From Salpingoeca rosetta (Eukaryota; Protista; Choanoflagellata), in contig JAWQFM010000010.1 in assembly GCA_033442325.1 (NCBI GenBank), forward strand, positions 879,727-943,726: a DNA stretch of 64,000 nt. Direction: 5' to 3'. Each line of letters opens with the position of its first letter. The first letter of the stretch is position 1. A program made the position numbers and the translations under genes. Under the pieces are notes generated by a model. It made no database searches, was not told where the DNA came from, and worked only from the letters and a program-made list of their open reading frames with translations. Positions 486-38,908 of this stretch are shown here, in pieces.

Positions 486-523
<38 letters not shown>

Positions 524-1280: not shown

Positions 1281-1330
<50 letters not shown>

Positions 1331-2217
1331 CGAACCATCAGCATGGGTGCAGAACATGAGAAGTCGCGGCGGTGGTGTTGGTCCTGGCAATGGGCTGCGC
1401 CGCAAGGAACAACAGGGAGAGGACGAGAGCCAGCCCCTCATCCAAAGCGATGGCAGTGATGTGGAAGCGAGTGGCAGCTCTGTAATTGGACGCCAGCATG
1501 CGCACGACCACCCAGACAGCATCAGTGGCAGTCACATCAGTGATAGCAGCAGCGGCAGCAGTGCCAATACTGAGGATGCGAGTCGCGTTGTGACTCGCCG
1601 CTTCGTCTGTCACCCTGGCAGCTTGTTCGGTGCGTGCAGTTGTTGAACTACACTGTGCAATACGACGCTGGTGCTCTGCGTGGAAAATTGAGGCAGGCTT
1701 TGTGAAATGTGTAGGACCACATCATCCATCCCAAACCCACCCCAAAACTCACACTCACACCATACTCACGCTGACCCACACGCACGCTCGCGCCAACAGG
1801 GGAGGTGTCGTTTGTGCTTCGTCAACCGCGGGATTTTCGTGCCGTCGCGAAGACGCGCTGCAGAGTTTCGTGCCTCAGCAGGTGTGTGCTTGTGCATGGG
1901 TGCGTGCGTGTGCGTGTGTGTGTATGTGAAGCAGAAACTCACACATGCACGTTTGCATGCTTTGCGCCGAGGGCATGTTTTCACGTGCATGCGAGATAAC
2001 ATGTGTGTGTTGCGGTGTTTGTTGCAGTGTATTTCGTGTACCTCACCTGCAAGCCTGCGCATGCGTGTCTCTCATGGTGTGCAACGAACGCAACAGGGCC
2101 GCGTTTGATGCACTGCAGAACAGGAGCGGCGACGATCGATTCCAGCTGCTGTCCGCCATTGTGACGCGCAGCCTCGCCCTCATGCTACAAAACAACGACG
2201 AAACATTCTTCGTTTGA
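1..2217 (+). CDS. 3' part of a multi-exon SulP/SLC26-like (yeast Vsb1-like architecture) protein with a C-terminal cyclic-nucleotide-binding (CNB) domain; 5' end is outside the window
   Basis: The spliced exons give FETLEDALVWCEDSFL (resembles the end of STAS in SulP-CNB proteins), QSFEAGDVIFAEGEDGDGMYFVLSGEVTLL (CNB beta strands) and HPGSLFGEVSFVLRQPRDFRAVA (phosphate-binding cassette). Stop TGA is at 2215-2217. The CNB call is solid; the SulP call rests on one motif. Confidence 0.65.
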
Positions 2218-2226
2218 ACACACTGC

Positions 2227-2319
<93 letters not shown>

Positions 2320-2454
2320 ACGAGCGTATTAATCACAACTTCTCTAGCGGAACCCTGGCAAAAACCAAAACACGCGTGACATAAAAACCGACAATAAACA
2401 CATTCGGAACAAAGATCTGAAAAAAGAAACCCGTAAATACTCCCCTGAAAATTA

Positions 2455-2554
2455 NNNNNNNNNNNNNNNNNNNNNNNNNNNNNNNNNNNNNNNNNNNNNN
2501 NNNNNNNNNNNNNNNNNNNNNNNNNNNNNNNNNNNNNNNNNNNNNNNNNNNNNN
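2455..2554. other. Assembly gap (100 N)
   Basis: Run of N characters, with an A-rich, low-quality-looking flank at ~2317-2454. Confidence 0.99.
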
Positions 2555-2676
2555 CTTGTGATTGTGTCTAACAGGCCCCTTCCATTCGTAAAGTTTGTAC
2601 TGGAGCAGTGTAGCAATCGCCACCTGCATGTGCCATAGAGTATGTAGACAAGACACGCACTGCATCACACCATGTA

Positions 2677-2731
<55 letters not shown>

Positions 2732-2834
2732 CTACATCACAAAGAGGCGAAAAGGGAACAAGGACCCGTAGCATCAACGCAGGGCAGTGCACGCTCATCA
2801 TCAATCGGAGCATGAAGCACAGTTGTTGTTGCGG

Positions 2835-3383
2835 CTATGATCGCTTCGCAGACTTGAACGACCGCAAAGGGTCCTGGGCAGACCGCCTCTTACCGCTCTT
2901 GGCCCCACCACCACCACCACGACCACCACCACGACCACCACCGCGACCAGCACCACGACCAGCACCACGACCACGCCCCCTGCCACGACCTCCACGGCCA
3001 CCACGGCCACCACCACCACCACCACGGCCACCGCCACGACCACCATCACTGTTGCCGCCTTTGCTGTTCTTGTTCTTCTTCTTGGACACACGAAGCCGCT
3101 GTGCATCTGTGGATTTGGGCTTGAGGTAAAATGGTAAATCCTTCAAGTGCGGCTTGATGTCCTTGACGTCATGCAGAACCGTGTCATGTCGCAACACCTG
3201 CAGATCGCGCGGGTTCTCCACAAAGTGTGCCTGCAGGCAAGGAATACACAAAGGGGAAGGGAGGGTTGAGCGATTGGGAGGTGTGAGGAAGAAGCGTGGG
3301 TTGGGTTCAGGATGCGATAGCCAGTACGCCAATACATCCGCAGCAGAGGCAGTTGTGTGTGTATGTGCACATGCGTGTGACTG

Positions 3384-24682: not shown

Positions 24683-25388
24683 CTGGTTCTCGATTTTGAG
24701 CTGCTCAAAGTCGATGAGGTGGAGCCCGCCGGACATTTTGTCCTTCTCACGCATTTCGTGCTGGGCCTGTTCCAGCGTGGCCTTGAGGCGATAGTGCTTC
24801 CTGCGGCTTGCCGCAAGCTCCTCCTCCTTCTCCTCGTAGTCCTTGTCCATGGGCGCAAACTCGTTGGCACGCAGGCGGGTGCCGTTGCGAGAGCTGGCGC
24901 AGAGAAATGCAGCGATTGCATTCGATTGCATGAGATGGGATAGCGGGTGAGGACGGACGAGGGATGGTCGATCGAGCCAGCAAGGAAAAAAGCAAGCAAA
25001 GGGTGAGTGAGCATTCAAGAACACAAGCTTTCGTCCAAAACGAACAAGGGGAAAGGGGGGCAAGCAGCGCATACACACCACACACGCAGGCGGGCATGGC
25101 ATGGCATGTTACCTGATGGACTGCAGGGCCACGCGCCGGCGCAACTTGGCGTACGCCTTGACGGATTGGGCAACCTCCTCCGTGCGCACGGCTTGCAGAT
25201 CATGCAGGCGCGCAAGCTGAATGGGGCACCCAGCACACACGCCAGGCAACAAGGTGAGCACCGAGCAACAAGCACACAACACACGCGCAGAAGTATCTCG
25301 GTCACATGCAGCGACAGCGCATCACAACACAACAGACCAAGCGCAAAGTATCCGTTCACACAACAACAACAACAACAACTTAAACAGC

Positions 25389-25470
<82 letters not shown>

Positions 25471-27284
25471 CAAGTCCGTGGCTGCACCTCCTGTGTGTAG
25501 TATGTCTTCGTGTCCTGGTCCTCCGTGGCGAACCGGGCCAGGTCCTTGAGGATGCCCTGGTACCGCAGGCGCGCCTCCCCTTGCTTCATAAGCGGCTTCT
25601 GGTCCTTGAACCGCCGCCGCAGCAGCTCGGCCAGGTTCGCCTGTAGAATGGCGTTCCTGCTGGTGAGGGCGTCGTGGTCGCGCTGCAAGGCCTGCAGCCG
25701 CTGCGTTGCCGCCATGCGCCGTTGCTTCAGCTCGAGTGCAGCCGCGTGCTCCTGCTCGGCGCGCTCGCGGGCCCGTCGCTCCTCTTCCTCGCGTCGCCGC
25801 CTCTCCTGCTCCTTGCGCGCAGCAATCTCCTCCGGGGACGGTCCAAGCGACTCCAGCGCATCCTGAAGTGCCGCCAGCTCCTGTTCTTTGGTGGCGATGG
25901 CCGCATCAAGGTCCTCCGCTTCCTCAACAGAGTTGGCACGCTCGCGCTCCCCATGTAGCTGCGCAAGCTGCTCCTCCACCTTGGCAATGTTGGCGCGCAG
26001 CCTATCCCCGGGACTCATGGCCCGTGCAGCCTCATCCTCGCCGTCGTCACTGCTCTGTGTGGACTCTCCCTCCTGCGGCTGTTCGGTGGCCCCGCCCTCA
26101 CTTCCGCGACCTTCAGCGGGTGACGCTGTGCTGCTGTTGCCCAGACGAAGCTGGCTCGCTTCCGCCTCCAGTTCGTGGATGCGCCGCTCAAGCTCTGCAT
26201 TTGTGTCCAGCACATGGCGGGCCTTGGACGTCTCCTCATCCTCCTCCTCCTCCTGCTTGCCTTGGGCCGATTGCTCCTCCTGTCCTCCCTTCTGCTCCTC
26301 CTCTGCGCTGGTTGGCTGCTCTTGTTGGTGTTGCTGCTGCTCGCCTGAGCTCTCTGCTGCAGGTTGCTGCTGCTCTCCTTCATCCTTCGCTTCACCGGCT
26401 GCCTGATCTCCAGCCTTTCCATCATCTTCCTTCTCCGATGGTTGATCTCCTTGGTCTGTTGACGGCGCTGCCTCGTCTCCCTCATCACCTGCGCCTGCGT
26501 CAGCCTTGCCATCACCCTCGGCTGCCTCTTTCTCGCCGTTCTTCTCGCCTTCAGCTGCAGCCTGTGCGGCTTGATAGTCTTTGCCGGCAGTGTCTGCATT
26601 GGGCGCCGCTTCCTGCTCTTCCTTGGGCGCTTGCTCTTGCTTGGGCTTGTAGTCTGGAAGCCGCTGCAACGCGTCCTCCACTTGTGACCGCAGCGCCTCC
26701 TTCTCCGCCCTGACCTTCTCCAACTCGGCCTCCACGACCTGGAGCCGCTGTGCTACGTCGTCATCAAGAACAACGTTGTCGTCATAGTCCTCAACGCTGA
26801 TGGATGGGCGCCCTGCTTCCGGGGCTGCTGTCGTCTGCTCGCCAGCGCCGCCGTCATCGCTGTTGCTCTGTGCTTGGTCTGGCTGCTGCTCTTGGTTTTG
26901 CTGTTGTTGTTCCTGTTGTTTTAATTGGTGTTCCTGCTGCAACTCTTGTCCCTCCTGGCCCTCTTGTGGCTGCTGGCCCTCTTCGTTCTGGCCTGCGCTT
27001 TGCTCTGGCTGTGGCTCTTCTTGCTGTTCACCTTCGCCTTCTTGCTTGGGCGCTTCGTCGGTCGCTTCCTGCTGCGATGCGTCAGCGGCTTGATCGACAG
27101 GCGCTGCCTCGCTCTGCCCCTGCTGTTCCTGCTGTTGTCCGTCTTGCTGTTGTTCCTGCTGCTGTCCTTCTTGCTGTTCCTGCTGTTGCTGTTCCTGTTG
27201 TTCTCCTTCTTGTTGTTGCTGCGCTTCCTGTTGAGGCGTTGCCTCGCTTCCAGGCGTGGTTGGCTGTGCCTCTTCGTCTGCCAT
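24683..27284 (-). CDS. CCDC96: CCDC96/CFAP184-like ciliary coiled-coil protein, N-terminal part; lacks the usual C-terminal half of DUF4201
   Basis: Long acidic Q/E-rich N-terminus, then a coiled coil, then the signature GLHLIDFEQLKIENQ ending at a phase-0 GT donor (24682). ATG at 27284. Confidence 0.8.
25360..25471. repeat. (CAA)n intronic microsatellite
   Basis: Trinucleotide run following a GT donor of the CCDC96-like gene. Confidence 0.9.
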
Positions 27285-27674
27285 GATGGTTGTTGGTTGT
27301 TGGGTGCTGCTGCTTTTGCTTGTTGTTGGCAAGGGATCGCTGATTTATGAATGATGCCACACAATTATCTACACACAAGGAAGCAAACCAGACAGAGCGC
27401 GAGAGGATTTGAGCACTCAGTGGCTTCATGTCAGCACATGCAAGCACTCAAGCGTCCAGGAGGCCACATCACACAGGCTATGCTGCACACCACACAGCGG
27501 ACACGTATCATCAGCTGGGAAGAACAGAAACAAGGAGAAAAGCAAGAAAGGAGGACAGGCAAACAGAAATGCACAAAAAAGCACTGGATTGATGAGGCAC
27601 AGTCACTACACTACAGCCACTACGTATCCACATGAACGTTGGCGCTTGACACACACTTGCAGTTAGAAAGTTAG

Positions 27675-27885
27675 ACACACACACACACCACACACCACAC
27701 ACCACACACCACACACCACACCACACACCACACACCACACCACACACACCACACGCACCACACAACACACACCACACATAGCACACACACACCACACACA
27801 CCACACACACCACACACCACACACCACACACACACACCACATACAAACGGCACTCACACAATCAAACAACACACCACGCAACACA
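27675..27885. repeat. Intergenic (CACAC)-type low-complexity repeat
   Basis: Degenerate CAC/CACAC run between the receptor stop codon and the CCDC96 start. Confidence 0.8.
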
Positions 27886-27929: not shown

Positions 27930-30900
27930 TCAGCAAGATGAGCAGATGACGGGGCAGTCGATAAACTTCACGCCTGCGCCAGCACAAACACAGGTAGCGT
28001 TGAAGCCGCGGCAACGCACACTGATAAGGGCCGAGTTGTACTGTGTCAAGTCCACGACCCCGCCAACATGAGCCAGCGAGCCAAAGTCCACCTCAATCAG
28101 CGCCGGGTTCCCCTTCAGTTGCAGACTACCCCCAATGTTCGTAACGCCACCAAGGTCCACCCGCGTCAGCGAAGAGCACTGTTGCAGAACCACATCCCCA
28201 CCAATGTCGCCCAGCAATGCAAAGTCAGCGCGTACGCTGCGAACACTGCCAAAGTCCACGCTGGTGAGGGAGGAGCACTGCGAGATGTCAACATCTCCGC
28301 CAATGCTGTCCACCGACGCAAAGCTAACGTTGCTCAGCATGCCCAGGCTGCTCAGCTGAACGCTCCCGCCTACACCCGTGAGAGCTCCAAAGTCAATCGT
28401 TGTCAGCTCATGTGCTGTCTGGAGGTGCAGGTCGCCCCCAATACGGCCGATGGAGGTGAGGTGGATGGCTGGCAGCGCCAGGGCAACTTGAAGGCTTAAG
28501 CTTCCGCCAATCGCAGCCAGGGAGCCAAACGATATCTGCGTCAGCTGTTGCATCTGCGACAGCAACAGGTCACCACCTATCATCTCCAGTGTGCCCAAGT
28601 CAAGGGTCTTCAACACGCTGTCACTGCTCAGGTCCAGATCGCCACCAATGGCGGTGAGCGTGGCAAATGTGATGCTTTGCACGTCAGGTTCGTGGTTGAG
28701 GTACAGCGTGCCGTTGACGCTGCCCAGAGAAGCATCTTGGAAGGCTGACTTGCCAGCCAGGCTGATACCCAGACTGCTGTTGATGTGCAGCTGGCTGACC
28801 GACTCCAGCACCTGCACGTCGATGTACAGCGTGCTGCCAACCTCCGGCAGGGCGTGAAAGTCAAGGCTTGGCAGCGCATCGTTGTGCGACACGTCCAGGT
28901 CGCCCCCGACATGTGTGACTTGCCCAAAGCTCACGCTCTGAAAGCGGTTGTGGTCCAGACGCAACGCCCCGCCAACGCGTGTCAGCTCCCCAAAGTCAAC
29001 TTGCGTGAGATCGTTAGACTCCAGGCGCAAGTCGCCACCAATGTCCCGCAAGCGGCTGCCCAGATCAAGCATCTGCAGCGCAGTCTTGGTGACGGCCAAG
29101 CTGCCGTTGACTCGCAGCAGGTTGGGAAAGTTCATGGCAGTGAGCGCATTGTAAGTCACGGAGAGATCGCCTCCAATTTCCCGCAGTAGTCCGGTGTCAA
29201 GGCCGTCCAGGCTGTTGGCGTCCAAGAGCACACCGCCACCCACTCGCGTCAGCATACCAAAGTCAACGTCGTTCAGAGCGCCGTTGTTGGTCAGGATAAG
29301 GTCCCCTCCCACTTCAGCAACGTTGCCAGCATCAAAGGCCTGCAGAATGTTGGCTTGAAGGAGCAGGCTGCCGCCAATCTTCGACAAGGGGCCGAAAGTG
29401 ACCAAGGTCAGGCTGTTGGCTTGGAGATCAAGGTCCCCGGCAATGTGGTCAAAGGCCGAGATGAAGATGTAGAGACTGCCCTGATTCTGCTCGATGGCGA
29501 CGCTGCTGTTGAAGTCGAGGTTGCTTGCGGATGACAGCGCCACTTCCGGCAGTCGTACGCTCCCTCGGAAGGGAGGCAGTACCGAAAAGTCAAACGTGCT
29601 CAGAGCCGCGTTCTCGTCCAGGGTTAGCTCCCCAAGCACGTACTGCAGCTTGCCAAACTTGAACATGCTCACACTCGTTGCGCTCAAATCCACGTCATCG
29701 CCCACGAACGCCAGCGAGCCAAAGTCAATGGAGCCGAGTGGGTTGTTTTGGAGCTTGAAAGACCCAGCCACCCGCTCGAGCGAACCCACGGTGAGAAACT
29801 CGAACGAGTTGGACGACAGATCAAACCCGCCACCAACGGCAGTGAGCGTACCAAAGGAGATGCCAGAGAGCTTGTTTTCCCTCAGCGTCAGCGAGCCCCC
29901 GACCTGCGCGAGCTTGGGGAAGGAGATGGTTTCCAGCTCATTGGCCTCCGCCGTAAAGTCGCGGCCAATGAGCGACAGCGGACCAAGGCTGAGGGTGGCA
30001 ATGTCGTTGCCGCTGATGTCCACGCTGCCACCCACCGTCAACACCTCGCCAAAGCTCAGGGTGGCCAGCTTGTTGGAGTTCAGCAGGAGGTCTCCGCCCA
30101 CTTGAGTGACACTGCCAAAGTTGACAGTGCACAGGTCATTGTCGGAAAGGTTGATGTGCTCGCCCACGCTGGTGAGCTGCCCAAAGTCAATAGACGTGAG
30201 CTCGTTGGCGGGGATGTGGATGCTCCCGTCCACGTGTTTGAGATTGCCCAGGCTGAGACGCGTCAGCCGGCTGCCGTCCAGGCGCAGGCTCCCACCCAGG
30301 TCAGTCACGTTGCCAAGACTCATGTTTCTGAGGTTTGGGTTGGAAGAGGCGACAATGTCGCCCCGGACATGCGTCAGGTTCTGCAAGTCAACGCTGCCGA
30401 GGTCGTCGTTGCTCGACAAGATCAGAGAGCCGTTGATGAACGCCAAGGCACCGTCAAACGCAAGGTTGCTGAAGGCGTTCTGGGTGAGATCCAGATCACC
30501 CGCGGTGCGCACCAGGGCATCGCCAAAGTCGATGATCGAAATGCTGTTGCTGCTGGCATCGATGTCACCGCCCGCGTGCTGCAGGGACGCAAAGGACAGC
30601 GACGTGAGCAGGTTGTGCTGCAGATACAAGCCGCCGCCAACGCTGGTGAGCGCAGCAAGGTCGAGGGCCGTCAGGTCGTTGGAGGAGAGGTAAACATCGC
30701 CGCCAACAGCCGCGACCTGGCCAAAGCTGAAGCTTGGGAGATGGTTGCGGTGCGCGGAGAGATGTCTGCCGACGCTGGTCAGCGCCCCAAGCGACACCTG
30801 AGTGATGGCGTTGAATGCAAACGAAACATCGCCGTTAACTCTGCTCAACTGTGGGAAGTCAATGCTCGGCAGGTTGTTGTTGTCCAGCAAGATGCTGCCT

Positions 30901-33900
30901 TGCACGTCCAGAAGCAGGTCACATGTGACACCGGTGAGCTGGTTCGAGTTGAGCCGCACGCTGCCGGACACGCGGGCAAGGCGTGGGATGTCCAGGCTGG
31001 TGAGCGCGTTGAACCGCAGGTCAAGGTCACCGCCGACGCTGTCCAGGTTGGTGAGGGTGATGTTGGCGATGTTGGTGTGGCGAACGAGAAAGGCGGCCCC
31101 CACCGAGCGCAGTAGACCGAGGTCGACCGACACCACCTCGTTCACGCTCAGATCCAGCTCGCCTTCCACCGTCACCAATCCCGTGAGGTCCAAAGCCGCG
31201 AGGCGGTTGAAGCTCAAGTCGAGGTTACCGCGCACCTCGCTGATGGCTGAGAGGCTGGCCCTGGTGAGCGCATTCCGTTGCAGATACACGTGCCGCACTA
31301 TGCTCGAGAGGGCATCCAGCGCCAGACTGGGCAGCTTGGCGTTGTCGTGGATGTGGATGTCCACAAACACGGTCGTCAGGCCATCCATGCGGAGATCAAC
31401 CAGGGCTGCATTGTCGGTGATGTACACGGACGCCTCCACGGTCAACAGGGCAGATGTGTCGATGAGGGTGAGCTGCGGGTTGCGCTGCACGCGCAAGTCT
31501 TCAAACACATCGTGCAGGGCGGGAAAGCTGAGCGTAGAGAGGTAGTCGTTGTCGCTGATGCTCAGTTGTGTCGCATCGTCCAGACTGGTGGCCGTGATAG
31601 CCGTGGCTGCGGTGTGTGCAACTCGCAGGGAGCGAACGCTGGTCACACCGCCCAAGTTGATGTGTGCGATTGGGCTGTGCTCAATGACGAGTTGTTCCAA
31701 GATGCGCAGCATGGAGCCAAAGTTGATGCTGCTGATCTTGTTGGGCGACTCGGGCGTGCCGGACACCAGAAGGGAGCCCTGCATGTACTCGATGTCGCCA
31801 AAGCTGAGGGCCATGAGGGCATGCATGCTGGCTGTGATGGTGACATCACCGGTCAGCACGCCAGAGCGGATGCTGAAGCTGGTCGTGCCCACCCCATAAA
31901 CCTTGCCCCCAACCTCTGACAATCGCCCAACGTGGAAGGACTGCAGCGGCAGGCCGCGCAAGTCGACGTCGCCGCCAACGGCAGTCAGCGTGTCAAGCTG
32001 CACAGATGCGGGACGCGTGCCCACAACGCGCAAGCTGCCATTAACACGCTGCAAGCTGTCGAATAGCAGCTCCGTTGTGTCCGCCCCAACATCCACGTGC
32101 ACGTTGCCTGCCATGTCTTGAAGCTGAGCGCGGGAAAGCGTGAAGAAATCAAGGAAGACGGTGCCGTTGGGGGCAAGCGCCTGGCCGAGCACGAGTTGCG
32201 TCAGGTTGGCGTTGCCGCGCACGTCAATCACGTCAAACGCACCCGTGATGTCAGCCAGATCCAGCACCTCCAGCGCACACGACGAGAGGTTGAGTGCTGT
32301 TGGCGTGCCCTGCGCGTTGTTGAGGGTGAAGGAGGCGCAGCCGAGATCAACGGCCCTGGGCACGTTATCCCCAGCATGGGAGACGCGTAGGTGCTTGATG
32401 GGGTTGCCTGACAGGCGAGCGCCACCAGCAGAGGGTGGAAGCTGACCGACATCGATGGAGGTGAGGGCGTTGTTTTCCAAATCAACGCTGTCGCCCACGA
32501 AGACGAGCTGCCCAAAGCGCACGCGGGTGATGGCGTTGTCGCGAAGGCTGATAAATCCGCCCAACAGGGTGACTTGACCCAAGTCTACCTCTGTCAGCGC
32601 GCCATTGGCAGCTGTGATACCACCACCTATGCTCGTCAGGTGTGGGCCGAGATCAAGCGTTTGTGCGAGAGGCGACACTGAGATGGAGCCAGTGACACTG
32701 CGCAGGCGGTAAAACTCGTCGCAGCAGCACGAGGTGACAGCAGCAACCTCACAGGGCGCGGCTGCTGCAATGGCTTGACGCGATGTTATGCTGCTGCAGT
32801 CGAGCACATCAGTGCTGATGCCAGAGCAGAGCTGTGTCGTTGTTGTCGTTGTGGTTGCGGTAGTTGACAGACCTGACTGTGCCGTGCTGGTGGTAGTCGG
32901 CAATGTGGTGGTGGGCGCGGTGGTGCTGTTTGATTTGGACTTGCTGGTGGCAGCGGGCCCAGTTGAGGTGATGGCAATGGGAACAGCGACGGCAGCAGCC
33001 ACAATTAACGCAACGACGATGCCGACGAGGAGCAGACGCTTGCTCGATCTGCCCTTTGACACGGCCACCTGCTCCGTCGTGGTCTCTGAGCCCAGGGCCG
33101 TGAAGTCCTTGTGCAGGGGCCGCATCATCAGGTGCTGGCCCTCCTTGCCTTGTCTGTGTCCCAGCGCAGAGAGCAGCTGCGCATCGTCCGTCGAGGCTTC
33201 GCCGTACACGGAGAAGTCGCCCAACCCGACCTGGTCGTACGTCTCCTCTTGATGGACTCCTCTACTTACGGGCGTCAAATATGTTCGGCCCGCAGCACCA
33301 GTGGTGGTGTCTGTGGTGGTCGATGGGGTGGCATCAGCTGTGCCATACACTTGAAAGTTTCCCGGGTCAGGCGTATCGTACGCGGGCTTGTCTTCTTTGC
33401 TGCTGGGGTTGGTCGCTGTGGTGGTGGTGGCTGTACCGGGTTTCTGCTGCTGTGTGGACTCTGTGCCGTACACATCAAAGTCGCCCAAGCCCGCGGTTTC
33501 GTAGGTGTTGTCGGCTTCCACGTTGGTGGCCGCAGTCACTTCCAAGTAGTCACCGCTGCTGTTGCCGTTGCTGTCATCGGGGTCGGCCGTGTTGCTGTTG
33601 CTGCTGCTGCTGCTGCTGTGGGCCGCAGTGCCTATGATCGCGCTGGTGTTTGTGTTCGTGTTGGTGGTCGCGCCAGCAGCGGCAGGGTTTGGTCGCACGG
33701 CCTCATACGTGGCGTTGAACAAGTCTCTTTGCTCAAATGTGTCAGCAGGCTCCAAGTATGTGCGCTGCGAGGCAGGTACCTGAACCGTGTGTGTGTGAGT
33801 GTGTGAGTGTGTGAGTGAGTGTGTGAGTGAGTGTGTGAGTGAGTGAGTGAGTGAGTGTGTGAGTGAGTGTTTGTGTGTGTGTGTGAATGAGTGTGAATGA

Positions 33901-34712
33901 GTGCGAGTGAGTGAGTGTGAGTGAGTGTGTGTGTGTGTGAGTGAGTGTGAGTGAGTGAGTGTGTGTGACAGTGTTTGTGACGTGCCTGCAGGCAAGAACC
34001 GAATGACAACAGCAAGTAGACCACTGACCGGCTGCTCCTGCTGTTGTCGTTGCTGCTGCTGCTGCTGTAGCGGTGCCTGCCATCCAAATTGCCGGCTGCT
34101 GTTGGCAGGCACAATCGCCTGGTTGAAGAGACATGAGTTAGAAGTAAGCGTATGTGAGTATGCGAGCCTTGTTTTGTGTGTGTGTGTGTGTGTGTGTGCA
34201 GGAAAGAAATGATCGCCGAACACTGCGTATGTGAGACGAATGCCAATACGCACCATATGTACTTGTTCACACACACATACACACACACACACACACACCT
34301 GCAGCTTTGAGATGATGGCGTCGATGAGCTGCGAGGGAATGGCTGTTGTTGGGCTTGGCAAGGTGTAATGTGCACGCGCGTCTGGGAGGCGCTTGCGCAC
34401 ATCCCGCGAGGCGAACTTGTCACACATCTTGATGAGAAAGAAGGGCTTGTTGTGTTTGAGGATGGAACGCAGCTGGGCAGCGGAGCTGGCCTTGTTTCGC
34501 GACCGCTTGCCGTAGTCCTTCGTGCCCATGATCACTGCCAGCGTGCATGCAAGCACGGCTGCCGTAGCACTGGATTTGCCACCTCTGCCGTCATCGTCTC
34601 CTGGTGAGAACACGCGCACCCCACGCTGCTCCAATGCAGCCCTCAGTGTTCTCGTGACATCCCCATTCTCATGGCAGGAAAGGAACACATCACAACCAGC
34701 AGTGGAGGCCAT
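27930..34712 (-). CDS. Type II single-pass receptor (~2117 aa): N-terminal TIR-like domain, Tyr-motif linker, TM helix, Thr-rich stalk, Cys cap, ~60 LRR/receptor-L-like repeats, Cys cap
   Basis: Exons 34712-34299, 34118-34029 and 33779-27930, all phase 0 GT-AG. TIR-like CDVFLSC...LRAALEQRGVRVF...CTLAVIMGTKDYG...KPFFLIKMCD. TM LLLVGIVVALIVAAAVAVPIAI (33035-32970) preceded by KGRSSKR. ~22-aa repeats LxxVGGxLxLxxNxLxxxxFG. No signal peptide. Confidence 0.85.
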   Translation of the reverse strand: MASTAGCDVFLSCHENGDVTRTLRAALEQRGVRVFSPGDDDGRGGKSSATAAVLACTLAVIMGTKDYGKRSRNKASSAAQLRSILKHNKPFFLIKMCDKFASRDVRKRLPDARAHYTLPSPTTAIPSQLIDAIISKLQVCVCVCVCVCEQVHMVRIGIRLTYAVFGDHFFPAHTHTHTHKTRLAYSHTLTSNSCLFNQAIVPANSSRQFGWQAPLQQQQQQRQQQEQPVSGLLAVVIRFLPAGTSQTLSHTLTHSHSLTHTHTHSHSLTRTHSHSFTHTHKHSLTHSLTHSLTHSLTHSLTHSHTHTHTVQVPASQRTYLEPADTFEQRDLFNATYEAVRPNPAAAGATTNTNTNTSAIIGTAAHSSSSSSNSNTADPDDSNGNSSGDYLEVTAATNVEADNTYETAGLGDFDVYGTESTQQQKPGTATTTTATNPSSKEDKPAYDTPDPGNFQVYGTADATPSTTTDTTTGAAGRTYLTPVSRGVHQEETYDQVGLGDFSVYGEASTDDAQLLSALGHRQGKEGQHLMMRPLHKDFTALGSETTTEQVAVSKGRSSKRLLLVGIVVALIVAAAVAVPIAITSTGPAATSKSKSNSTTAPTTTLPTTTSTAQSGLSTTATTTTTTTQLCSGISTDVLDCSSITSRQAIAAAAPCEVAAVTSCCCDEFYRLRSVTGSISVSPLAQTLDLGPHLTSIGGGITAANGALTEVDLGQVTLLGGFISLRDNAITRVRFGQLVFVGDSVDLENNALTSIDVGQLPPSAGGARLSGNPIKHLRVSHAGDNVPRAVDLGCASFTLNNAQGTPTALNLSSCALEVLDLADITGAFDVIDVRGNANLTQLVLGQALAPNGTVFLDFFTLSRAQLQDMAGNVHVDVGADTTELLFDSLQRVNGSLRVVGTRPASVQLDTLTAVGGDVDLRGLPLQSFHVGRLSEVGGKVYGVGTTSFSIRSGVLTGDVTITASMHALMALSFGDIEYMQGSLLVSGTPESPNKISSINFGSMLRILEQLVIEHSPIAHINLGGVTSVRSLRVAHTAATAITATSLDDATQLSISDNDYLSTLSFPALHDVFEDLRVQRNPQLTLIDTSALLTVEASVYITDNAALVDLRMDGLTTVFVDIHIHDNAKLPSLALDALSSIVRHVYLQRNALTRASLSAISEVRGNLDLSFNRLAALDLTGLVTVEGELDLSVNEVVSVDLGLLRSVGAAFLVRHTNIANITLTNLDSVGGDLDLRFNALTSLDIPRLARVSGSVRLNSNQLTGVTCDLLLDVQGSILLDNNNLPSIDFPQLSRVNGDVSFAFNAITQVSLGALTSVGRHLSAHRNHLPSFSFGQVAAVGGDVYLSSNDLTALDLAALTSVGGGLYLQHNLLTSLSFASLQHAGGDIDASSNSISIIDFGDALVRTAGDLDLTQNAFSNLAFDGALAFINGSLILSSNDDLGSVDLQNLTHVRGDIVASSNPNLRNMSLGNVTDLGGSLRLDGSRLTRLSLGNLKHVDGSIHIPANELTSIDFGQLTSVGEHINLSDNDLCTVNFGSVTQVGGDLLLNSNKLATLSFGEVLTVGGSVDISGNDIATLSLGPLSLIGRDFTAEANELETISFPKLAQVGGSLTLRENKLSGISFGTLTAVGGGFDLSSNSFEFLTVGSLERVAGSFKLQNNPLGSIDFGSLAFVGDDVDLSATSVSMFKFGKLQYVLGELTLDENAALSTFDFSVLPPFRGSVRLPEVALSSASNLDFNSSVAIEQNQGSLYIFISAFDHIAGDLDLQANSLTLVTFGPLSKIGGSLLLQANILQAFDAGNVAEVGGDLILTNNGALNDVDFGMLTRVGGGVLLDANSLDGLDTGLLREIGGDLSVTYNALTAMNFPNLLRVNGSLAVTKTALQMLDLGSRLRDIGGDLRLESNDLTQVDFGELTRVGGALRLDHNRFQSVSFGQVTHVGGDLDVSHNDALPSLDFHALPEVGSTLYIDVQVLESVSQLHINSSLGISLAGKSAFQDASLGSVNGTLYLNHEPDVQSITFATLTAIGGDLDLSSDSVLKTLDLGTLEMIGGDLLLSQMQQLTQISFGSLAAIGGSLSLQVALALPAIHLTSIGRIGGDLHLQTAHELTTIDFGALTGVGGSVQLSSLGMLSNVSFASVDSIGGDVDISQCSSLTSVDFGSVRSVRADFALLGDIGGDVVLQQCSSLTRVDLGGVTNIGGSLQLKGNPALIEVDFGSLAHVGGVVDLTQYNSALISVRCRGFNATCVCAGAGVKFIDCPVICSSC

Positions 34713-35155
34713 GACCTTGTGCTGTGCTGTGCTTTGGTGTGATGTGCTTTGGTGTGTTGGGTGGGGGGCGTTATGGAAATGCAGGAGGAGCACGGTTGGT
34801 GTGTTTGTTTGTTTTGCTGTTTGGCTGGAAAACCAAAGGAAAACATCCACAAAGATTCGCAGCATAGCACAACAGGCAACAACATATGGCGCCATTTGAC
34901 GAACAACAACACAGCAGCACGACGCAAGCACACGCAGCGCTTGGTCCTCCCTCCACACCTTCCATTGCACGGCAGGGCATGAGACTTGCTGCGTCCCTGA
35001 TGGGAAATGCATGAGTTCGTTTATGCTTCGCTTTCAAAAGCACCAAAGAAAAAAAAAAAAGGAAAGGCTCCAGACGGCGACACCTGCGCCAAGCAAAATG
35101 TAGAAAGACAAACGCTGTTGAAGCTGTTGCACAACACCACACGCATGCACAGGTA

Positions 35156-35186
<31 letters not shown>

Positions 35187-35302
35187 GCACACACACACAC
35201 ACAAATGCAGCACACACACACACACACATGCAGCAGCACACACGCGCGCACATGCACGCACGCACACACGCACACACACGCACACACAAAAACGAGCAAC
35301 AA

Positions 35303-38300
35303 TCATCGCCTCCTGGGCGAATCAAAGGAGATGGTGTGAACGGGAAGAGACATGAGCGGCTGTACGCGGGGAACATGCGCACAGGTGGACGCCGCACGAC
35401 GAAGCAAAGGCGACGCAAGCGGGGGCGCCTGTGGTCGCTGCTGCTGCTGCTGCTGATGGTGGTTGCGCGGGGTGTGGCGAGCGTTCTCCTGGTGGTGCTG
35501 ATACGGCAGCGCCATCATGCGCCGTGTCAGCCCACGCGCTGCAGAGACGCCAGTGGCGGGTGCTTCCTTTGCTGCTGGCGTGCTTGTCGTCGTCGTCGTC
35601 GTCGTCATGGAGCGATAGCGGCAAGGAACGGGCGAGCCAACTGCAGGCACATGTTGTTGTTGTTGCTGTCGCTGCTGCTGCTGCTGTTGGTGGTGTTCTT
35701 GTTGTTGGTGTTGGTTGTGGTGGTGTTGGTTGTGGTGGTGGTGCTGTGGCCCGTCTGCGCCTTGTGCGTCCACTGCTGCGTCGTCCACAGGTGTGGAATC
35801 ACACCAACGCGCAGCCTCATTAATGTCATGCTTCGCATACAAACACAGCAGCAAGTGCTTGGTCAGAAACACCAGCCGCGAGCACAGGTGTTTCTCTTCC
35901 TCGGTTGGACTCACAATTGCCATCAGCGGCTCAATCGCCTGCCAGGACGAGCTGGGCAGCGTGAAGCAGTTCCACAGCCCTTGGCCGTGGCTGAACGACA
36001 GCCGGTCAAACACGCGCGCAACCACACGTGCCGCCCGCGGACTAAGGCCCTTTCTGTGTCCACCGCCACCACCGCCACTACCACCACTACCGGCACGGTC
36101 CATGGCTGTCGATGCCGGTGCTGTGGAGGCGAGGAGCGACGCTGCCGTGCTCATGACGCGTTGCCGGCACGACACCAGGATGCGGTGGCGATCTGCAGGC
36201 GACAGCGTGCGCAGCCAGTACTTTGCAATGCGCGCCCGGTGCTGCACAAACGTTTCCTCAATGTCAGTCGCGTGCTCCACCACCTCCTCATCAAACTCGT
36301 CAATGCCAATGGTGGCTGCGCCGTTCAGCAGCAGGTGGTGCAGGAAGAGCACCAGGCCCTGGTCGCGTTTGCGCTGCTCCTCTGCCCGGCCAAGCGATAA
36401 ACCACGCTGCGCGGGCACACGCGGGTGACGACGCAAGGACGCCAGCGACGAAGCCGATCGCGACGTCACAAGGCTGCCGCCATCAGACGCGGTGGTGCCT
36501 GCAGGCAACGTGGGCGCACGTGTGCGTAGCGACCTTGCAGAGGATGAAGCAGACACCATTGCCGCTGATGTTGACGACGCAGAGGCACCAACGCCGGCTG
36601 TGGTGCCCGTGGAGCGCTGTCGTGTGGATAATGACGATGATGATGACGACGATGACGTGGGCAGCTGATGGTTCGATTGGCGCACGCGCGTACCCACGGA
36701 CGTCTGCACCACACCAAGGGCCTTGGACATGAGGGCCTCATACTGCAGCAACAGCCCTTCGTTCTCTGGCGGGAAGATGCGATGGTAGTCACCGCTGTGC
36801 TCGTCCTCGTACGCCATCTGCTTCTGCGCCTCCCGATCCTGCATACTGCCACCATCGCCATCAACGCTTACGCCATCATCATCACAGTTATCATCATTGG
36901 TGTCGTCATCATCCTCCTCATCCTCATCCTCATCATTCTCGTTCTCATTATCATCCTCATCCTCATCGTCGTCGTCGTCATCATCATCATCATCACGATC
37001 ATCTTTGGTTTCGGCGGTGCTATTGTGGTCGTCTCGACCATCACCTACTCGCTGCTTTTCCTCCCCTTTGTGAACATCATCAGTGTCGTCGTTGTCAGCG
37101 TCAGCATCACTGCCACCGCCTCCTCTTCCCCTGCCGGTTGCTGCTGCCGCTGCCGCTGCCGCTGCCGCGGATCCGCGGCATTTCGTTGCGTGCATGCGTG
37201 TGTGCGTGTGCGAGTACCAGTGGTGGCCGCGGCGGCGCGGTAGTGGCTCTGCTTCGCTCACTTCGCCGCTCCCATCGTCACAGTGCAGAAGTCGGTTTGC
37301 CCTCGCAATCGCAGCTGCAGCAACGCCATCACCGTTTGGCGCTGCTTTCGCTTTCGAAGAAGATGCTGTGGCGCGTGCATTTCCAGCACGATTGCCGTTG
37401 CTGATGCTCTTGTTGCTGTTGCTGTTGTTGTTGCTGTTGCTGTTCTTGCTGCCGCTGGTGCCGCTGGTGGTGGTGGACGTGCTTGATGGTGTTTGCTTGT
37501 GCAAGCGCCTGAGTGCCGATGCCTTTGCCTCTGCCTGCCACGCCTTGCGCTCCTGCGGACGAATGTGCATCATGCGCAGCGCGGACTGCAGCACGCCGTG
37601 TTTGATGCGGGCGTCGAGCTGCGAGTCGCACGTGAAGCTTGGCGCGCGGTTGACCTCGATAATGTACGGCTTGAGCTTCGATGTGAGCAGCACGTCAAAC
37701 CCGAGCACCTCGAAGCACATGCTCTGGCGCGGGGGTGCGCGGCCGCCCCTGTTGCGCCCGCGGTGCAGCTGGCACGCCGCATATCCCTGGCGCACAAACG
37801 GCAGCGCCACAATGACCGTCTTGATGATGACGTCTGCGATGCGCTTCTGCAGCCGGTCTGTGTCGACACCGTGCTCATCCGCAAGGTGCTTGAGCAGCCA
37901 CTGGTATGTGCGCTTGCTGCCCGTGTCGTCGTCGTCGGTCTGCTGGAAGTTCTCTGCGCCCTTGTTGAGCGAGTAGTTTGTGAGGTGCATGGTGACGTCG
38001 GCCACGTTCTTCTTCGTGGGCGCCTTGTACGGGGTGGTGGAGAGGCGCACGAGCCCGTCCTTGAAGAGATACACGCGCAGCGGGTCGCACGATGTCAGCA
38101 GCACATACAGGCGCAGGTCAAACTTGTACCCGTCCACCAAGAACGGCTTTGGGAGGTACTCCTGCACGAGCAGGGAGTCCTGCGTGGGGATCTGTGACGG
38201 GTTCTGCGTGACTGCAATGCCAATGCCGCGAGCGCCGTTGATGGGTTTGTAGATGAAGGTGGGCTTCTTCTTTGCCTTTGCCTTCTTACAGTCGTCGACG

Positions 38301-38908
38301 TACTTGCGGAAGTGCTGCAGATCGGCCGGCAGGACCCAGGAGCGCGGGAAGATGTCGAGCACGTTGCCATTGCACACGCGCAGGAGGCGGTTGAGGTTTC
38401 GTGCCAGGTTGTCCTTGCGCGTGATCTGGCCCGTGCCTGGGAAGTGGTTCATGCGCTGATAAGGAAGCAGCTTGGTGAACACCTCGCCCGGTGGACAGCA
38501 GTCAAACCACAGCAGGTTGCAGTCCATCGTGGTCGGGGACGTCTTGATCTTGAAGCCCAGTTCACGGCACACTTGCCGGACCATGTCGTAGTTGGTGTTG
38601 GCAAGGTTGGCTGTCAACTTATTCGCCTTGCCCTTTGCCTTGGCTTTTCCCTTGGCGTTGCTCGTTCGCTTCTTCTTGCCGCCACCTCCTGCTTTGGTTG
38701 TGGTTGTGGTGGCGGTGGTGCTGCTGTTGCCGGTGCTGTTGCCGGTGGTGGTGGTTGTGGCGGCACCTGTGTTGGCACCTGTGTTGGCACCTGTGTTGGC
38801 ACCTGTGTTGGCACCTGTGTTGGCACCTGTGTTGGTGTTGTTGGAGCCATGTTTCTTTGACGATGAGGCTGCTCCACCGCTGGCCGCATCTCCTTCTCCT
38901 CTTGCCAT
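35303..38908 (-). CDS. TTLL7: Tubulin polyglutamylase TTLL7-like (continuous 1201-aa ORF)
   Basis: TTL domain: RMNHFPG..RKDNL, FIYKP..ARGIGI, VQEYL.KPFLVDGYKFDLRLYVL, MHLTNYSLNK, CFEVLGFDVLL, IIEVNRAPSF. C-terminal RVFDRLSFSHGQGLWNCF..SSSW motif recalled from TTLL7. Confidence 0.9.
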   Translation of the reverse strand: MARGEGDAASGGAASSSKKHGSNNTNTGANTGANTGANTGANTGANTGAATTTTTGNSTGNSSTTATTTTTKAGGGGKKKRTSNAKGKAKAKGKANKLTANLANTNYDMVRQVCRELGFKIKTSPTTMDCNLLWFDCCPPGEVFTKLLPYQRMNHFPGTGQITRKDNLARNLNRLLRVCNGNVLDIFPRSWVLPADLQHFRKYVDDCKKAKAKKKPTFIYKPINGARGIGIAVTQNPSQIPTQDSLLVQEYLPKPFLVDGYKFDLRLYVLLTSCDPLRVYLFKDGLVRLSTTPYKAPTKKNVADVTMHLTNYSLNKGAENFQQTDDDDTGSKRTYQWLLKHLADEHGVDTDRLQKRIADVIIKTVIVALPFVRQGYAACQLHRGRNRGGRAPPRQSMCFEVLGFDVLLTSKLKPYIIEVNRAPSFTCDSQLDARIKHGVLQSALRMMHIRPQERKAWQAEAKASALRRLHKQTPSSTSTTTSGTSGSKNSNSNNNSNSNKSISNGNRAGNARATASSSKAKAAPNGDGVAAAAIARANRLLHCDDGSGEVSEAEPLPRRRGHHWYSHTHTRMHATKCRGSAAAAAAAAAATGRGRGGGGSDADADNDDTDDVHKGEEKQRVGDGRDDHNSTAETKDDRDDDDDDDDDDEDEDDNENENDEDEDEEDDDDTNDDNCDDDGVSVDGDGGSMQDREAQKQMAYEDEHSGDYHRIFPPENEGLLLQYEALMSKALGVVQTSVGTRVRQSNHQLPTSSSSSSSSLSTRQRSTGTTAGVGASASSTSAAMVSASSSARSLRTRAPTLPAGTTASDGGSLVTSRSASSLASLRRHPRVPAQRGLSLGRAEEQRKRDQGLVLFLHHLLLNGAATIGIDEFDEEVVEHATDIEETFVQHRARIAKYWLRTLSPADRHRILVSCRQRVMSTAASLLASTAPASTAMDRAGSGGSGGGGGGHRKGLSPRAARVVARVFDRLSFSHGQGLWNCFTLPSSSWQAIEPLMAIVSPTEEEKHLCSRLVFLTKHLLLCLYAKHDINEAARWCDSTPVDDAAVDAQGADGPQHHHHNQHHHNQHQQQEHHQQQQQQRQQQQQHVPAVGSPVPCRYRSMTTTTTTTSTPAAKEAPATGVSAARGLTRRMMALPYQHHQENARHTPRNHHQQQQQQRPQAPPLASPLLRRAASTCAHVPRVQPLMSLPVHTISFDSPRRR
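38762..38834 (-). repeat. 12-bp coding tandem repeat, (GANT)x5-6, in the TTLL7 N-terminus
   Basis: ggcacctgtgtt repeated about six times. Confidence 0.9.

What the first reader, a model, noticed from the sequence alone, without database searches (positions are those of the whole stretch)
27930..34712. 'Inverted Toll-like receptor': cytoplasmic N-terminal TIR plus extracellular C-terminal LRR-like solenoid in type II topology
Seen in sequence: no signal peptide; exon 1 encodes a 138-aa TIR-like domain; a single TM helix has basic residues (KGRSSKR) on its N-terminal side; a Thr-rich stalk, a Cys cluster, ~60 22-aa repeats with many N-x-S/T sequons and a C-terminal Cys cap follow. Established: animal TLRs are type I (LRR outside at the N-terminus, TIR at the C-terminus), and plant TIR-NLRs are intracellular. 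Inference: this protein has the same sensor-out/TIR-in logic but the reverse domain order, so it was probably assembled independently. It is a candidate microbial-sensing receptor class in a probable choanoflagellate, a group known to respond to bacterial cues.
Basis: partly seen in the sequence, partly recalled or inferred. Interest (0 to 1): 0.92.

Follow-up and report, generated by a model that had tools for sequence, protein, structure and literature searches.

The report
Reversed-order TIR membrane receptor gene
This Salpingoeca rosetta (choanoflagellate) gene most likely encodes a single-pass membrane protein with a TIR domain inside the cell and a very long leucine-rich-type repeat rod outside, the reverse order of a Toll-like receptor. 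It belongs to a small gene family I found no paper on, and its TIR has lost the residue needed for enzyme activity.

Summary
One open frame on the minus strand (34712..27933) holds a 138-aa N-terminal domain, a 243-aa tyrosine-rich linker, one strong membrane helix, a Thr-rich stalk, a Cys cluster, about 50-70 repeats of 22 aa and a C-terminal Cys cap.

Four tests identify the N-terminal domain as a TIR. Its own Pfam score is below threshold. A profile of 41 relatives hits solved TIRs first. The AlphaFold model (pLDDT 83) matches only TIRs in its top 28 Foldseek hits. Language-model features give TIR_2.

The ectodomain folds confidently (pLDDT 92.6) as a beta-solenoid that resembles LRR proteins. 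In Pfam it matches only the Receptor L domain.

The genome is Salpingoeca rosetta. By my own count it holds at least five genes of this layout, all with the same intron position after the TIR exon; one is annotated (PTSG_02597). The scan has already reported sibling genes on other pieces of this genome.

This copy differs in two ways. It has no SH2 domain, and the family-invariant Glu that aligns with the TIR catalytic Glu is Gln, so the TIR is probably a scaffold, not an enzyme.

The sensing function is untested.

The parts
34299..34712 (-). Exon 1: start codon and a 138-aa TIR domain of a divergent clade expanded in S. rosetta. It has Gln80 where the family has an invariant Glu.
   Evidence: Pfam TIR_2 E 0.008, 17.1 bits, below the 28-bit cut-off. 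phmmer finds 320 relatives. The family profile hits Roq1, RUN1, RPV1 and SARM1 TIRs. The AF2 model has pLDDT 83, and its top 28 Foldseek hits are all TIRs. Codon-usage log-odds is +0.34 in this frame only.
33765..34298 (-). Intron or introns rich in (TG)n/(CA)n, starting with GT at 34298 and ending with AG at 33766-33765. A possible 90-nt Gln-rich mini-exon lies at 34118-34029. The whole stretch has no in-frame stop.
   Evidence: Sequence. Codon usage is non-coding-like, and ambiguous for the mini-exon. All five paralogs have the same intron position, phase 0 after ...KL[QEK].
33036..33764 (-). Cytoplasmic linker of 243 aa, low in complexity, with 10 Tyr in recurring motifs. [TD]YL[ET][PV] occurs three times and Y-x3-4-G-x-G-x-F-x-VYG three times. 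A juxtamembrane stretch (KDFTALGSE...KGRSSKR) follows.
   Evidence: Codon-usage log-odds +0.43/+0.57 in frame. Its first ATG lies only 31 codons before the helix. Motif list. Related motifs and a related juxtamembrane segment occur in PTSG_02597, PTSG_02868 and the C9 and C35 paralogs.
32970..33035 (-). Single transmembrane helix (signal anchor), LLLVGIVVALIVAAAVAVPIAI.
   Evidence: Kyte-Doolittle 19-mer 3.01, the only segment above 1.8 in 2082 aa. More K/R on the N side.
32829..32969 (-). Thr/Ser-rich, mucin-like stalk.
   Evidence: Translation. Paralogs have the same element, up to about 130 consecutive Thr/Ser in the C15 copy.
32661..32828 (-). N-terminal Cys-rich cap of the ectodomain, including CCCDEFY.
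   Evidence: Cys positions. The CCCDE motif (CCCDEFY in most) recurs in the C4, C9, C15 and C35 paralogs.
28044..32660 (-). About 50-70 repeats of 22-23 aa (consensus about LTSIDFGxLTxVGGxLxLxxNx), broken by irregular segments: an LRR-like / Receptor-L-domain-like beta-solenoid.
   Evidence: Autocorrelation peaks at 22, 44 and 66. 48 profile-scored units. Pfam Recep_L_domain 62.4 bits and no LRR model. The AF2 model of the last 300 aa has pLDDT 92.6. Foldseek and VIA matches are LRR proteins.
27930..28043 (-). C-terminal Cys cap (RCRGFNATCVCAGAGVKFIDCPVICSSC) and the stop codon.
   Evidence: The cap pattern xDCxGLGxCVxxDxGxxLxNCPxxC is conserved in 12 S. rosetta paralogs, with three Cys invariant.

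Best explanation
The locus is one intact gene of Salpingoeca rosetta. It encodes a type II (N-in, C-out) single-pass membrane protein of about 2,080-2,110 residues.

Inside the cell:
- An N-terminal TIR domain from a clade that is expanded in this genome (39 matches).
- A 243-residue disordered linker with ten tyrosines in repeated motifs.

Outside the cell:
- A mucin-like stalk.
- A Cys-capped beta-solenoid of about 1,540 residues built from 22-residue leucine-rich-type repeats, probably a rod tens of nanometres long.

Most likely mechanism (inferred, not shown): a multivalent ligand or surface binds the solenoid and clusters the receptors. Clustering brings the cytoplasmic TIR domains and tyrosine motifs together. 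Because this copy has Gln in place of the family-invariant Glu that aligns with the TIR catalytic Glu, and also deviates at other near-invariant positions, its TIR most likely signals as a TIR-TIR assembly scaffold. It may pair with catalytically competent paralogs. Phosphotyrosine motifs read by SH2 proteins would be a second output; sibling genes carry an SH2 domain at the same place. NAD+ cleavage by this copy itself is unlikely.

Shown here: TIR fold, solenoid fold, single helix, one open frame, family membership.
Inferred: splicing, topology, clustering mechanism, ligand.
For: One gene:
- A single open frame of 2,360 codons spans the TIR exon, helix and solenoid.
- The 243-codon linker is strongly coding-like but has no ATG until 31 codons before the helix, so it needs exon 1. 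The upstream 100 codons are non-coding-like.
- Four further loci in the same genome (C4, C9, C30, C35) have the same order of parts. In each, the TIR exon ends in phase 0 at the same residue, followed by GT.
- The C4 copy is the annotated protein PTSG_02597, which joins TIR, SH2, helix and solenoid.

TIR:
- 320 relatives by phmmer.
- The family profile hits Roq1 at 5.7e-6, then RPV1, RUN1 and SARM1.
- The AF2 model has pLDDT 83 and pTM 0.79, and its Foldseek top 28 hits are all TIRs at E down to 6e-6.
- Atlas features match TIR_2 at 0.95.

Glu to Gln:
- The family motif 'EEL' aligns with Roq1 E85-E86-L87.
- All 40 aligned relatives have Glu there; this copy has Gln.

Solenoid.

Topology:
- No N-terminal hydrophobic segment, and a single helix scoring 3.01.
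- A 381-residue N-terminal part that includes a folded TIR precedes the helix.
- Cys caps, 17 sequons and a Thr stalk follow the helix.
- A TIR-less paralog (C15) is one uninterrupted ORF with the same tail-helix-stalk-solenoid order.
Against: - No RNA evidence was obtained for this locus.
- Neither this protein nor any candidate product is in the protein collection, so no independent gene model supports the join.
- The Pfam TIR score of the sequence itself is below threshold.
- The positive-inside difference is small (4 against 2).
- This TIR deviates at several otherwise near-invariant positions (R14H, C37P, E80Q, W119P). That could mean decay rather than a scaffold role.
- No ligand, partner or expression condition is known.
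Confidence: 0.7

Rival explanations
1. It is a surface adhesin or glycocalyx protein, not a sensor. The long rod on a mucin stalk would mainly mediate attachment (prey capture, cell-cell or substrate adhesion). The degenerate TIR and tyrosine motifs would serve anchoring or trafficking rather than signalling about microbes.
For: - The ectodomain is about 1,540 residues of solenoid, far longer than receptor LRR domains.
- It matches straight beta-helix adhesins and tailspikes almost as well as LRRs (Z 15.7-15.8 against 16.6).
- Many paralogs of the ectodomain family exist, and at least one has only a short tail without a TIR.
- This TIR lacks the catalytic-type Glu.
Against: - The TIR exon keeps coding-like codon usage and a confidently predicted fold.
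- Five loci independently keep TIR plus solenoid, some with an SH2 domain, which argues for a signalling output.
- Adhesion and signalling do not exclude each other.
Confidence: 0.15
2. There are two separate genes. The first is a TIR-only gene (34712-34299 plus read-through). The second is a type II solenoid gene whose translation starts at the Met pair at 33128/33125, 31 codons before the helix.
For: - No RNA check was made here.
- An ATG exists shortly before the helix.
- A TIR-less paralog exists.
- Short TIR-only proteins of this clade exist.
Against: - About 210 codons upstream of that ATG are strongly coding-like in the same frame and carry motifs conserved in paralogs, yet they have no ATG of their own.
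- The TIR exon has no stop and ends at the family's conserved splice position.
- The annotated paralog joins the parts.
Confidence: 0.08
3. It is a decaying paralog. The gene would be a recently inactivated or unexpressed copy of the family, with its TIR degenerating.
For: This TIR departs from the family at several near-invariant positions, including the invariant Glu. It ranks only 21st of 39 genomic matches to a profile that contains it.
Against: - There are no stops or frameshifts in 2,082 codons.
- Both Cys caps are intact.
- Codon usage is coding-like in exon 1 and the linker.
- The model is confident.
- A second family member (C30) has also lost the Glu while keeping an intact gene, which suggests a tolerated non-catalytic subtype.
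Confidence: 0.07

Closest known systems
Animal and choanoflagellate Toll-like receptors (signal peptide, LRR, TM, TIR; Richter et al. 2018, PMC6040629)
   Same: A repeat solenoid outside, one membrane helix and a TIR domain inside. The organism group is known to have TLRs and 'Kinase TLRs'.
   Different: - The order and topology are reversed: type II, with the TIR at the N-terminus.
- The ectodomain hits no Pfam LRR model.
- The TIR clade is nearer to plant TNL and SARM1 TIRs than to TLR TIRs.
- The linker carries tyrosine motifs, and siblings carry an SH2 domain.
- The LRR+TIR domain screen of that paper would not have picked it up.
S. rosetta PTSG_02597 (XP_004996095.1, 'hypothetical protein') and the unannotated C9, C30 and C35 loci
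   Same: - The same TIR clade (39% identity).
- The same intron position after the TIR exon.
- A related juxtamembrane segment and helix.
- The CCCDEFY cap, 22-aa repeats and C-terminal Cys cap.
   Different: - This copy has no SH2 domain (C4 and C9 have one).
- Its ectodomain is much longer than that of C4 (1,679 against about 290 residues).
- It has three copies of the paired-Tyr motif.
- It has Gln instead of the catalytic-type Glu (also lost in C30; kept in C4, C9 and C35).
Enzymatic TIR domains of plant TNLs (Roq1, RUN1, RPV1) and SARM1
   Same: They are the best sequence-profile and fold matches. The family shares the 'EEL' motif that aligns with Roq1 E85-E86-L87.
   Different: This copy has Gln at that Glu. 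Those proteins are cytosolic and not membrane-anchored, and there is no NB-ARC, ARM or SAM domain.
Receptor L domain (PF01030; EGFR and insulin-receptor ectodomains) and BspA-type bacterial LRR surface proteins (4fs7, 4h09)
   Same: The only Pfam family hit (62.4 bits). 4fs7 is the best Foldseek hit at E 3.7e-4. All are right-handed solenoids with short beta-strands.
   Different: - There are dozens of uninterrupted turns instead of a compact domain of about 150 residues.
- There are no furin-like Cys-rich domains.
- TM-scores are only 0.3-0.4.
- The Cys caps are specific to this family.
Intracellular TIR-SH2, TIR-Arm and TIR-Ank proteins of choanoflagellates (noted in PMC6040629)
   Same: The same TIR clade is fused to SH2, Arm, Roc-COR, WD40 and Ras domains in relatives. 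This shows that the clade is a modular signalling domain.
   Different: Those were described as lacking a transmembrane domain. Here the TIR is tethered to a membrane helix and a very large ectodomain.

Membership tests
TIR domain (Pfam TIR_2 PF13676 / TIR PF01582) | Sequence match to the family model at the curated threshold | tested here: not met
   TIR_2 scores 17.1 bits, E 0.008, against a cut-off of 28. However, a profile of 41 relatives hits solved TIRs first (Roq1 at 5.7e-6), and the relative PTSG_02597 passes PF01582 (21.5 against 21.3).
TIR domain (Pfam TIR_2 PF13676 / TIR PF01582) | Flavodoxin-like alpha/beta fold superposable on solved TIR domains | tested here: met
   The AF2 model has pLDDT 83 and pTM 0.79 with alternating strands and helices. 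The Foldseek top 28 PDB hits are all TIRs, probability 1.00, TMq 0.54-0.67.
Enzymatic (NAD+-cleaving) TIR subclass | Catalytic Glu at the start of helix alpha-C | tested here: not met
   The family Glu aligns with Roq1 E86 and is present in 40 of 40 relatives. This protein has Gln80.
Toll-like receptor | Signal peptide and LRR ectodomain N-terminal to the helix, with a C-terminal cytoplasmic TIR | tested here: not met
   The TIR is at residues 1-138, the helix follows at spliced residues about 382-403, the solenoid is C-terminal, and there is no N-terminal hydrophobic segment.
Toll-like receptor | Ectodomain recognised by LRR family models | tested here: not met
   No Pfam LRR model hits at E <= 0.1; only Recep_L_domain does. 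At the fold level it is LRR-like (Z about 16).
S. rosetta type II TIR-helix-solenoid family (undescribed; PTSG_02597 is an annotated member) | TIR exon of the same clade ending in phase 0 at ...KL[QEK] followed by GT | tested here: met
   CAG|GTGTGT at 34299/34298. The same position occurs in the C4, C9, C30 and C35 copies, and the TIRs align.
S. rosetta type II TIR-helix-solenoid family (undescribed; PTSG_02597 is an annotated member) | Basic juxtamembrane segment plus single helix, Cys-rich N-cap with CCCDE, 22-aa repeats, and a C-terminal C...C...CPxxC cap at the stop codon | tested here: met
S. rosetta type II TIR-helix-solenoid family (undescribed; PTSG_02597 is an annotated member) | One mRNA joining the TIR exon to the helix-solenoid exon | not testable with these tools
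The only support is indirect.
Receptor L domain (PF01030) | Match above the gathering score | tested here: met
   62.4 bits against 21.8 for the whole ectodomain, and 35.9 and 39.2 bits for two 500-aa pieces. The matches are to short stretches of the model, so they show shared repeat type, not an EGFR-like domain organisation.
Type II (N-in) membrane topology | N-terminus cytosolic and C-terminus extracellular | not testable with these tools
   Inferred from four things: no signal peptide, a long N-terminal part with a folded TIR before the only helix, more K/R on the N side, and Cys caps, sequons and a Thr stalk on the C side.

The most novel reading that the evidence does not exclude
Choanoflagellates independently built a family of reversed-topology TIR surface receptors. 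The family couples an LRR-like rod to two cytoplasmic outputs: TIR assembly or NAD+-derived signalling, and phosphotyrosine/SH2 signalling. Within it, Glu-less copies such as this one would act as non-catalytic co-receptors or decoys that pair with catalytic siblings. Members of the family would be the still unidentified receptors for bacterial cues or prey.
Probability: 0.25. Interest if true: 0.8.

Novelty: new variant of a known kind. Interest (0 to 1): 0.6.

Why it matters
[quoted passage not shown] S. rosetta changes its life history in response to bacterial molecules, but to my knowledge (not checked here) the receptors for those cues have not been identified.

A family of surface proteins with a TIR domain inside and an LRR-like solenoid outside, but in the opposite order to Toll-like receptors, would have two consequences:
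- It would show that the 'solenoid out, TIR in' design arose more than once near the origin of animals.
- It would give concrete, genetically tractable candidates for such receptors.

The family escapes screens based on Pfam LRR plus TIR domain pairs, and I found no paper describing it.

This copy adds a specific point. Some members have lost the catalytic-type Glu, as animal adaptor TIRs are thought to have done, so the family may contain both enzymatic and scaffold TIRs side by side.

Tried and rejected
1. RNA check of the exon joins. The look-up of sequencing runs listed 20 runs. The shares of words (0.50-0.57 in two small 2011 runs) would fit exon-only coverage, but the runs are not on record as RNA, so I do not count them.

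2. Search for an existing gene model. The search for homologous proteins with the long exon and with the N-cap region both came back blank. The candidate lists were saturated and length-limited, so this says nothing. Exact look-ups of five candidate products found none in the collection. phmmer with the TIR exon found no hit above 41% identity.

3. Orthologs of the full layout in other species. The search for homologous proteins with PTSG_02597 returned only 6 hits, none with the full layout outside S. rosetta. The search was limited, so the question stays open. Environmental proteins with TIR then a helix then Kelch repeats (P0081), and truncated TIR-helix proteins, do exist.

4. Upstream in-frame ATG at 35012. 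It would add a hydrophobic stretch before the TIR. I rejected it because codon usage there is non-coding-like in all frames and all paralogs start just before the TIR.

5. phmmer of the single TIR sequence against PDB gave only chance-level hits. The family profile was needed.

6. Literature. There were no hits for the PTSG identifiers, and no paper with this architecture in four further searches. The S. rosetta TIR assayed for cADPR production in bioRxiv 10.64898/2026.04.20.719644 is a different protein (F2UB80), and the family members I checked are not in its tables.

7. I sent no complex-prediction job, because no specific partner is claimed.
Full report
**What is there**

The minus strand of the window carries one uninterrupted open frame from 35012 to 27930. 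Translation from it gives, in order:
- a 138-residue domain ending at a GT (CAG|GTGTGT, 34299/34298);
- 534 bases rich in (TG)n/(CA)n;
- a 243-residue low-complexity stretch with ten tyrosines;
- the helix LLLVGIVVALIVAAAVAVPIAI, preceded by KGRSSKR;
- a Thr/Ser-rich stalk;
- a Cys cluster with CCCDEFY;
- a long array of 22-residue repeats;
- a Cys-rich C-terminus.

Hydrophobic autocorrelation of the ectodomain peaks at 22, 44 and 66 residues. It has 17 N-x-S/T sequons, and its Cys residues sit at the two ends. A repeat profile built from the sequence itself finds 48 scoring units, separated by irregular segments.

**Organism and gene model**

The best relatives of exon 1 include annotated Salpingoeca rosetta proteins. 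One of them, PTSG_02597, matches the window's own genome at 100%. The window is therefore S. rosetta, contig C10.

I could not check the splice junctions with RNA. I kept those places out of all later searches.

The evidence for one gene is indirect but consistent.
1. The TIR exon, helix and solenoid lie in one open frame.
2. Codon-usage log-odds are positive in frame for exon 1 (+0.34) and for the linker (+0.43/+0.57). They are negative for the 100 codons upstream of 34712 and for the intron stretches.
3. The coding-like linker has no ATG until 31 codons before the helix, so it needs an upstream exon to be translated.
4. Four other loci in the genome (C4, C9, C30, C35) show the same order of parts. 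In all five the TIR exon ends in phase 0 at the same residue (...KL[QEK]) followed by GT.
5. The C4 copy is the annotated 728-residue PTSG_02597, which joins TIR, SH2, tyrosine motifs, helix, CCCDEFY cap, repeats and C-cap.

Two splice models keep the frame. One joins 34299 directly to 33764 and gives 2,082 aa. The other includes a 90-nt Gln-rich mini-exon at 34118-34029 and gives 2,112 aa. The mini-exon's coding score is ambiguous.

**The N-terminal domain is a TIR**

Alone it scores below Pfam's threshold (TIR_2, 17.1 bits, E 0.008) and finds nothing in PDB. Four further results settle the question.
- phmmer over 1.84 billion representatives finds 320 relatives, 58 of them at E <= 1e-10.
- A profile of 41 relatives (A1) hits solved TIRs first: Roq1 at 5.7e-6, then RPV1, RUN1, SARM1, and bacterial and other plant TIRs.
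- AlphaFold2 with that alignment gives pLDDT 83 and pTM 0.79. The top 28 Foldseek matches in PDB are all TIR domains.
- The language-model feature search also returns TIR_2 clusters (0.95).

Relatives carry the domain fused to SH2, Arm, Roc-COR, Ras, WD40, PDZ and helicase modules. S. rosetta has 39 genomic matches. No TLR is among the 50 best solved-structure sequence hits, so this clade is not the TLR TIR clade.

**A feature specific to this copy**

In the profile alignment the family motif S-T-x-E-E-L aligns with Roq1 C-L-E85-E86-L87. From established knowledge, that Glu at the start of helix alpha-C is the catalytic residue of NAD+-cleaving TIRs; the RUN1 E100A entry is a mutant of the equivalent residue. 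All 40 other sequences in A1 have Glu there. This protein has Gln80, and it also deviates at R14, C37 and W119, which are near-invariant in the family. Among the five receptor-type copies, C4, C9 and C35 keep the Glu, while this one (Gln) and C30 (Ile) do not. The model places residue 80 in the first turn of helix 77-86.

**The ectodomain**

Pfam recognises only Receptor L domain: 62.4 bits for the whole, and 36-39 bits for two of the four pieces scanned (a third scored below the cut-off and the fourth matched nothing). No LRR model hits.

The last 300 residues, aligned with 11 paralogs (A2), fold with pLDDT 92.6 and pTM 0.91 as an all-beta solenoid with two to three short strands per repeat. 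The best Foldseek match is a BspA-type bacterial LRR protein (4fs7, E 3.7e-4), with low TM-scores. The exhaustive VIA search gives Z of about 16 to many LRR proteins (SDS22, decorin, FSH receptor, SlrP) and 15.7-15.8 to straight beta-helix adhesins and tailspikes. 'LRR-like solenoid' is therefore fair at the fold level, but the domain belongs to no curated LRR family.

The C-terminal cap (xDCxGLGxCVxxDxGxxLxNCPxxC) is conserved across 12 S. rosetta paralogs. In every copy whose full reading frame I read, the protein ends right after it.

**Topology (inferred)**

- There is no N-terminal hydrophobic segment (maximum 0.27), and only one helix-grade segment (3.01; the next is 1.77) in 2,082 residues.
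- A folded TIR plus a 243-residue linker precede that helix.
- Cys caps, sequons and a mucin-like stalk follow it.
- K/R are 4 against 2 in favour of the N side.
- A TIR-less paralog on C15 is one continuous ORF with the same tail-helix-stalk-solenoid order.

Established rules for signal-anchor proteins then give N-in, C-out.

**Cytoplasmic linker**

All ten tyrosines sit in recurring motifs. [TD]YL[ET][PV] occurs three times, and Y-x3-4-G-x-G-x-F-x-V-Y-G three times. A copy of the second motif is in PTSG_02597 (GFGVYGT), and the C35 copy has other Tyr motifs. C4 and C9 carry an SH2 domain between the TIR and the linker; this copy does not. The juxtamembrane segment is shared with PTSG_02868, which has the same TIR and helix but a propeller-like ectodomain. 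The TIR-helix cassette has therefore been combined with different ectodomains.

**How it most likely works**

- Shown: the parts and their order.
- Inferred: ligand or surface binding by the solenoid clusters the receptors, and clustering assembles the TIR domains and exposes or concentrates the tyrosine motifs for kinases and SH2 proteins.
- Because the catalytic-type Glu is missing, this copy probably acts as a scaffold or co-receptor rather than an NADase.
- The rivals are: mainly an adhesin; two separate genes; a decaying copy. They are listed with their tests in the rival explanations.

**Comparison with what is known**

Richter et al. 2018 (PMC6040629) described choanoflagellate TLRs, Kinase TLRs, and intracellular TIR proteins with SH2, Arm or Ank domains. 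Their search used Pfam LRR, Pkinase and TIR pairs, and this ectodomain would not have passed it. I found no paper on this layout or on the PTSG identifiers. The S. rosetta TIR assayed in a 2026 preprint is a different protein.

Earlier notes of this scan describe sibling genes on other pieces of the same genome, and two of them state that siblings are transcribed as one spliced mRNA. I reached the paralogs independently before reading those notes. I treat them as leads, not as evidence for this locus.

**Verdict**

This is a real and intact gene. It is a new member of an undescribed family that is a new variant of TIR-bearing membrane receptors. Its own particular features are the absence of an SH2 domain, a very long ectodomain, and a TIR that has probably lost catalysis. 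Splicing, topology and function remain to be shown.

Noticed in passing
G000:C9:1036500-1046499 (L011), G000:C30:542000-547500 (L012), G000:C35:630000-636200 (L022), G000:C4:548500-554500 (L013): Four sibling loci have the same layout: TIR exon, intron with (TG)n, then helix, CCCDE cap (absent in the C30 copy), 22-aa repeats and a Cys cap. C4 and C9 also have SH2 exons. C30, like this gene, lacks the catalytic-type Glu.
   Followed up: partly
G000:C15:1202368-1206186 (L006), ORF 523-3252: A TIR-less member of the same ectodomain family is encoded by one uninterrupted 909-aa ORF. It has a short Tyr-containing tail, a helix, a run of about 130 Thr/Ser, the CCCDEFY cap, repeats and the C-cap. One search shows more than 20 further loci with this ectodomain, so the ectodomain family is much larger than the TIR-bearing subset.
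   Followed up: partly
P0051 (PTSG_02868), P0159 (PTSG_05359), P0081 (metagenome): The same TIR clade is tethered to membranes in other ways. PTSG_02868 has TIR, a helix and a propeller-like repeat (DUF5074). PTSG_05359 has TIR, SH2 and a four-helix claudin/LHFPL-like domain. An environmental protein, P0081, has TIR, a helix and Kelch repeats.
   Followed up: partly
whole genome G000: There are 39 genomic matches to the TIR-clade profile A1. This is a large expansion, with fusions to Arm, Roc-COR, Ras, WD40, PDZ and helicase domains among the relatives.
   Followed up: partly
window 33036-33764 (-): A linear motif recurs three times: Y-x3-4-G-x-G-x-F-x-V-Y-G (NTYETAGLGDFDVYG, PAYDTPDPGNFQVYG, ETYDQVGLGDFSVYG). 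It also occurs once in PTSG_02597. The two Tyr are about 11 residues apart, roughly the spacing seen in paired-tyrosine signalling motifs. Its meaning is untested.
   Followed up: partly
window 33765-34298 (-): The intron stretch has no in-frame stop, so even an unspliced transcript would encode TIR, helix and solenoid in one protein of 2,260 aa. The stretch is mostly (TG)n/(CA)n-type repeats, which lack stops in this frame, so this may be chance.
   Followed up: no
window 35306-38908 (-): The upstream neighbour on the same strand is a 1,201-aa tubulin-tyrosine-ligase family protein (PF03133, 243 bits) with long low-complexity tails.
   Followed up: partly
window 25383-27332 (-): The downstream neighbour is a 650-aa Glu/Gln-rich open frame with a coiled-coil-looking C-terminal half and no Pfam match. 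A (CA)n/(TG)n tract at about 27511-27884 separates it from this gene.
   Followed up: no
window 35138-35241: This stretch tripped the read tool's filter. The tool states that this can happen by chance. I did not examine it with any search tool afterwards.
   Followed up: no
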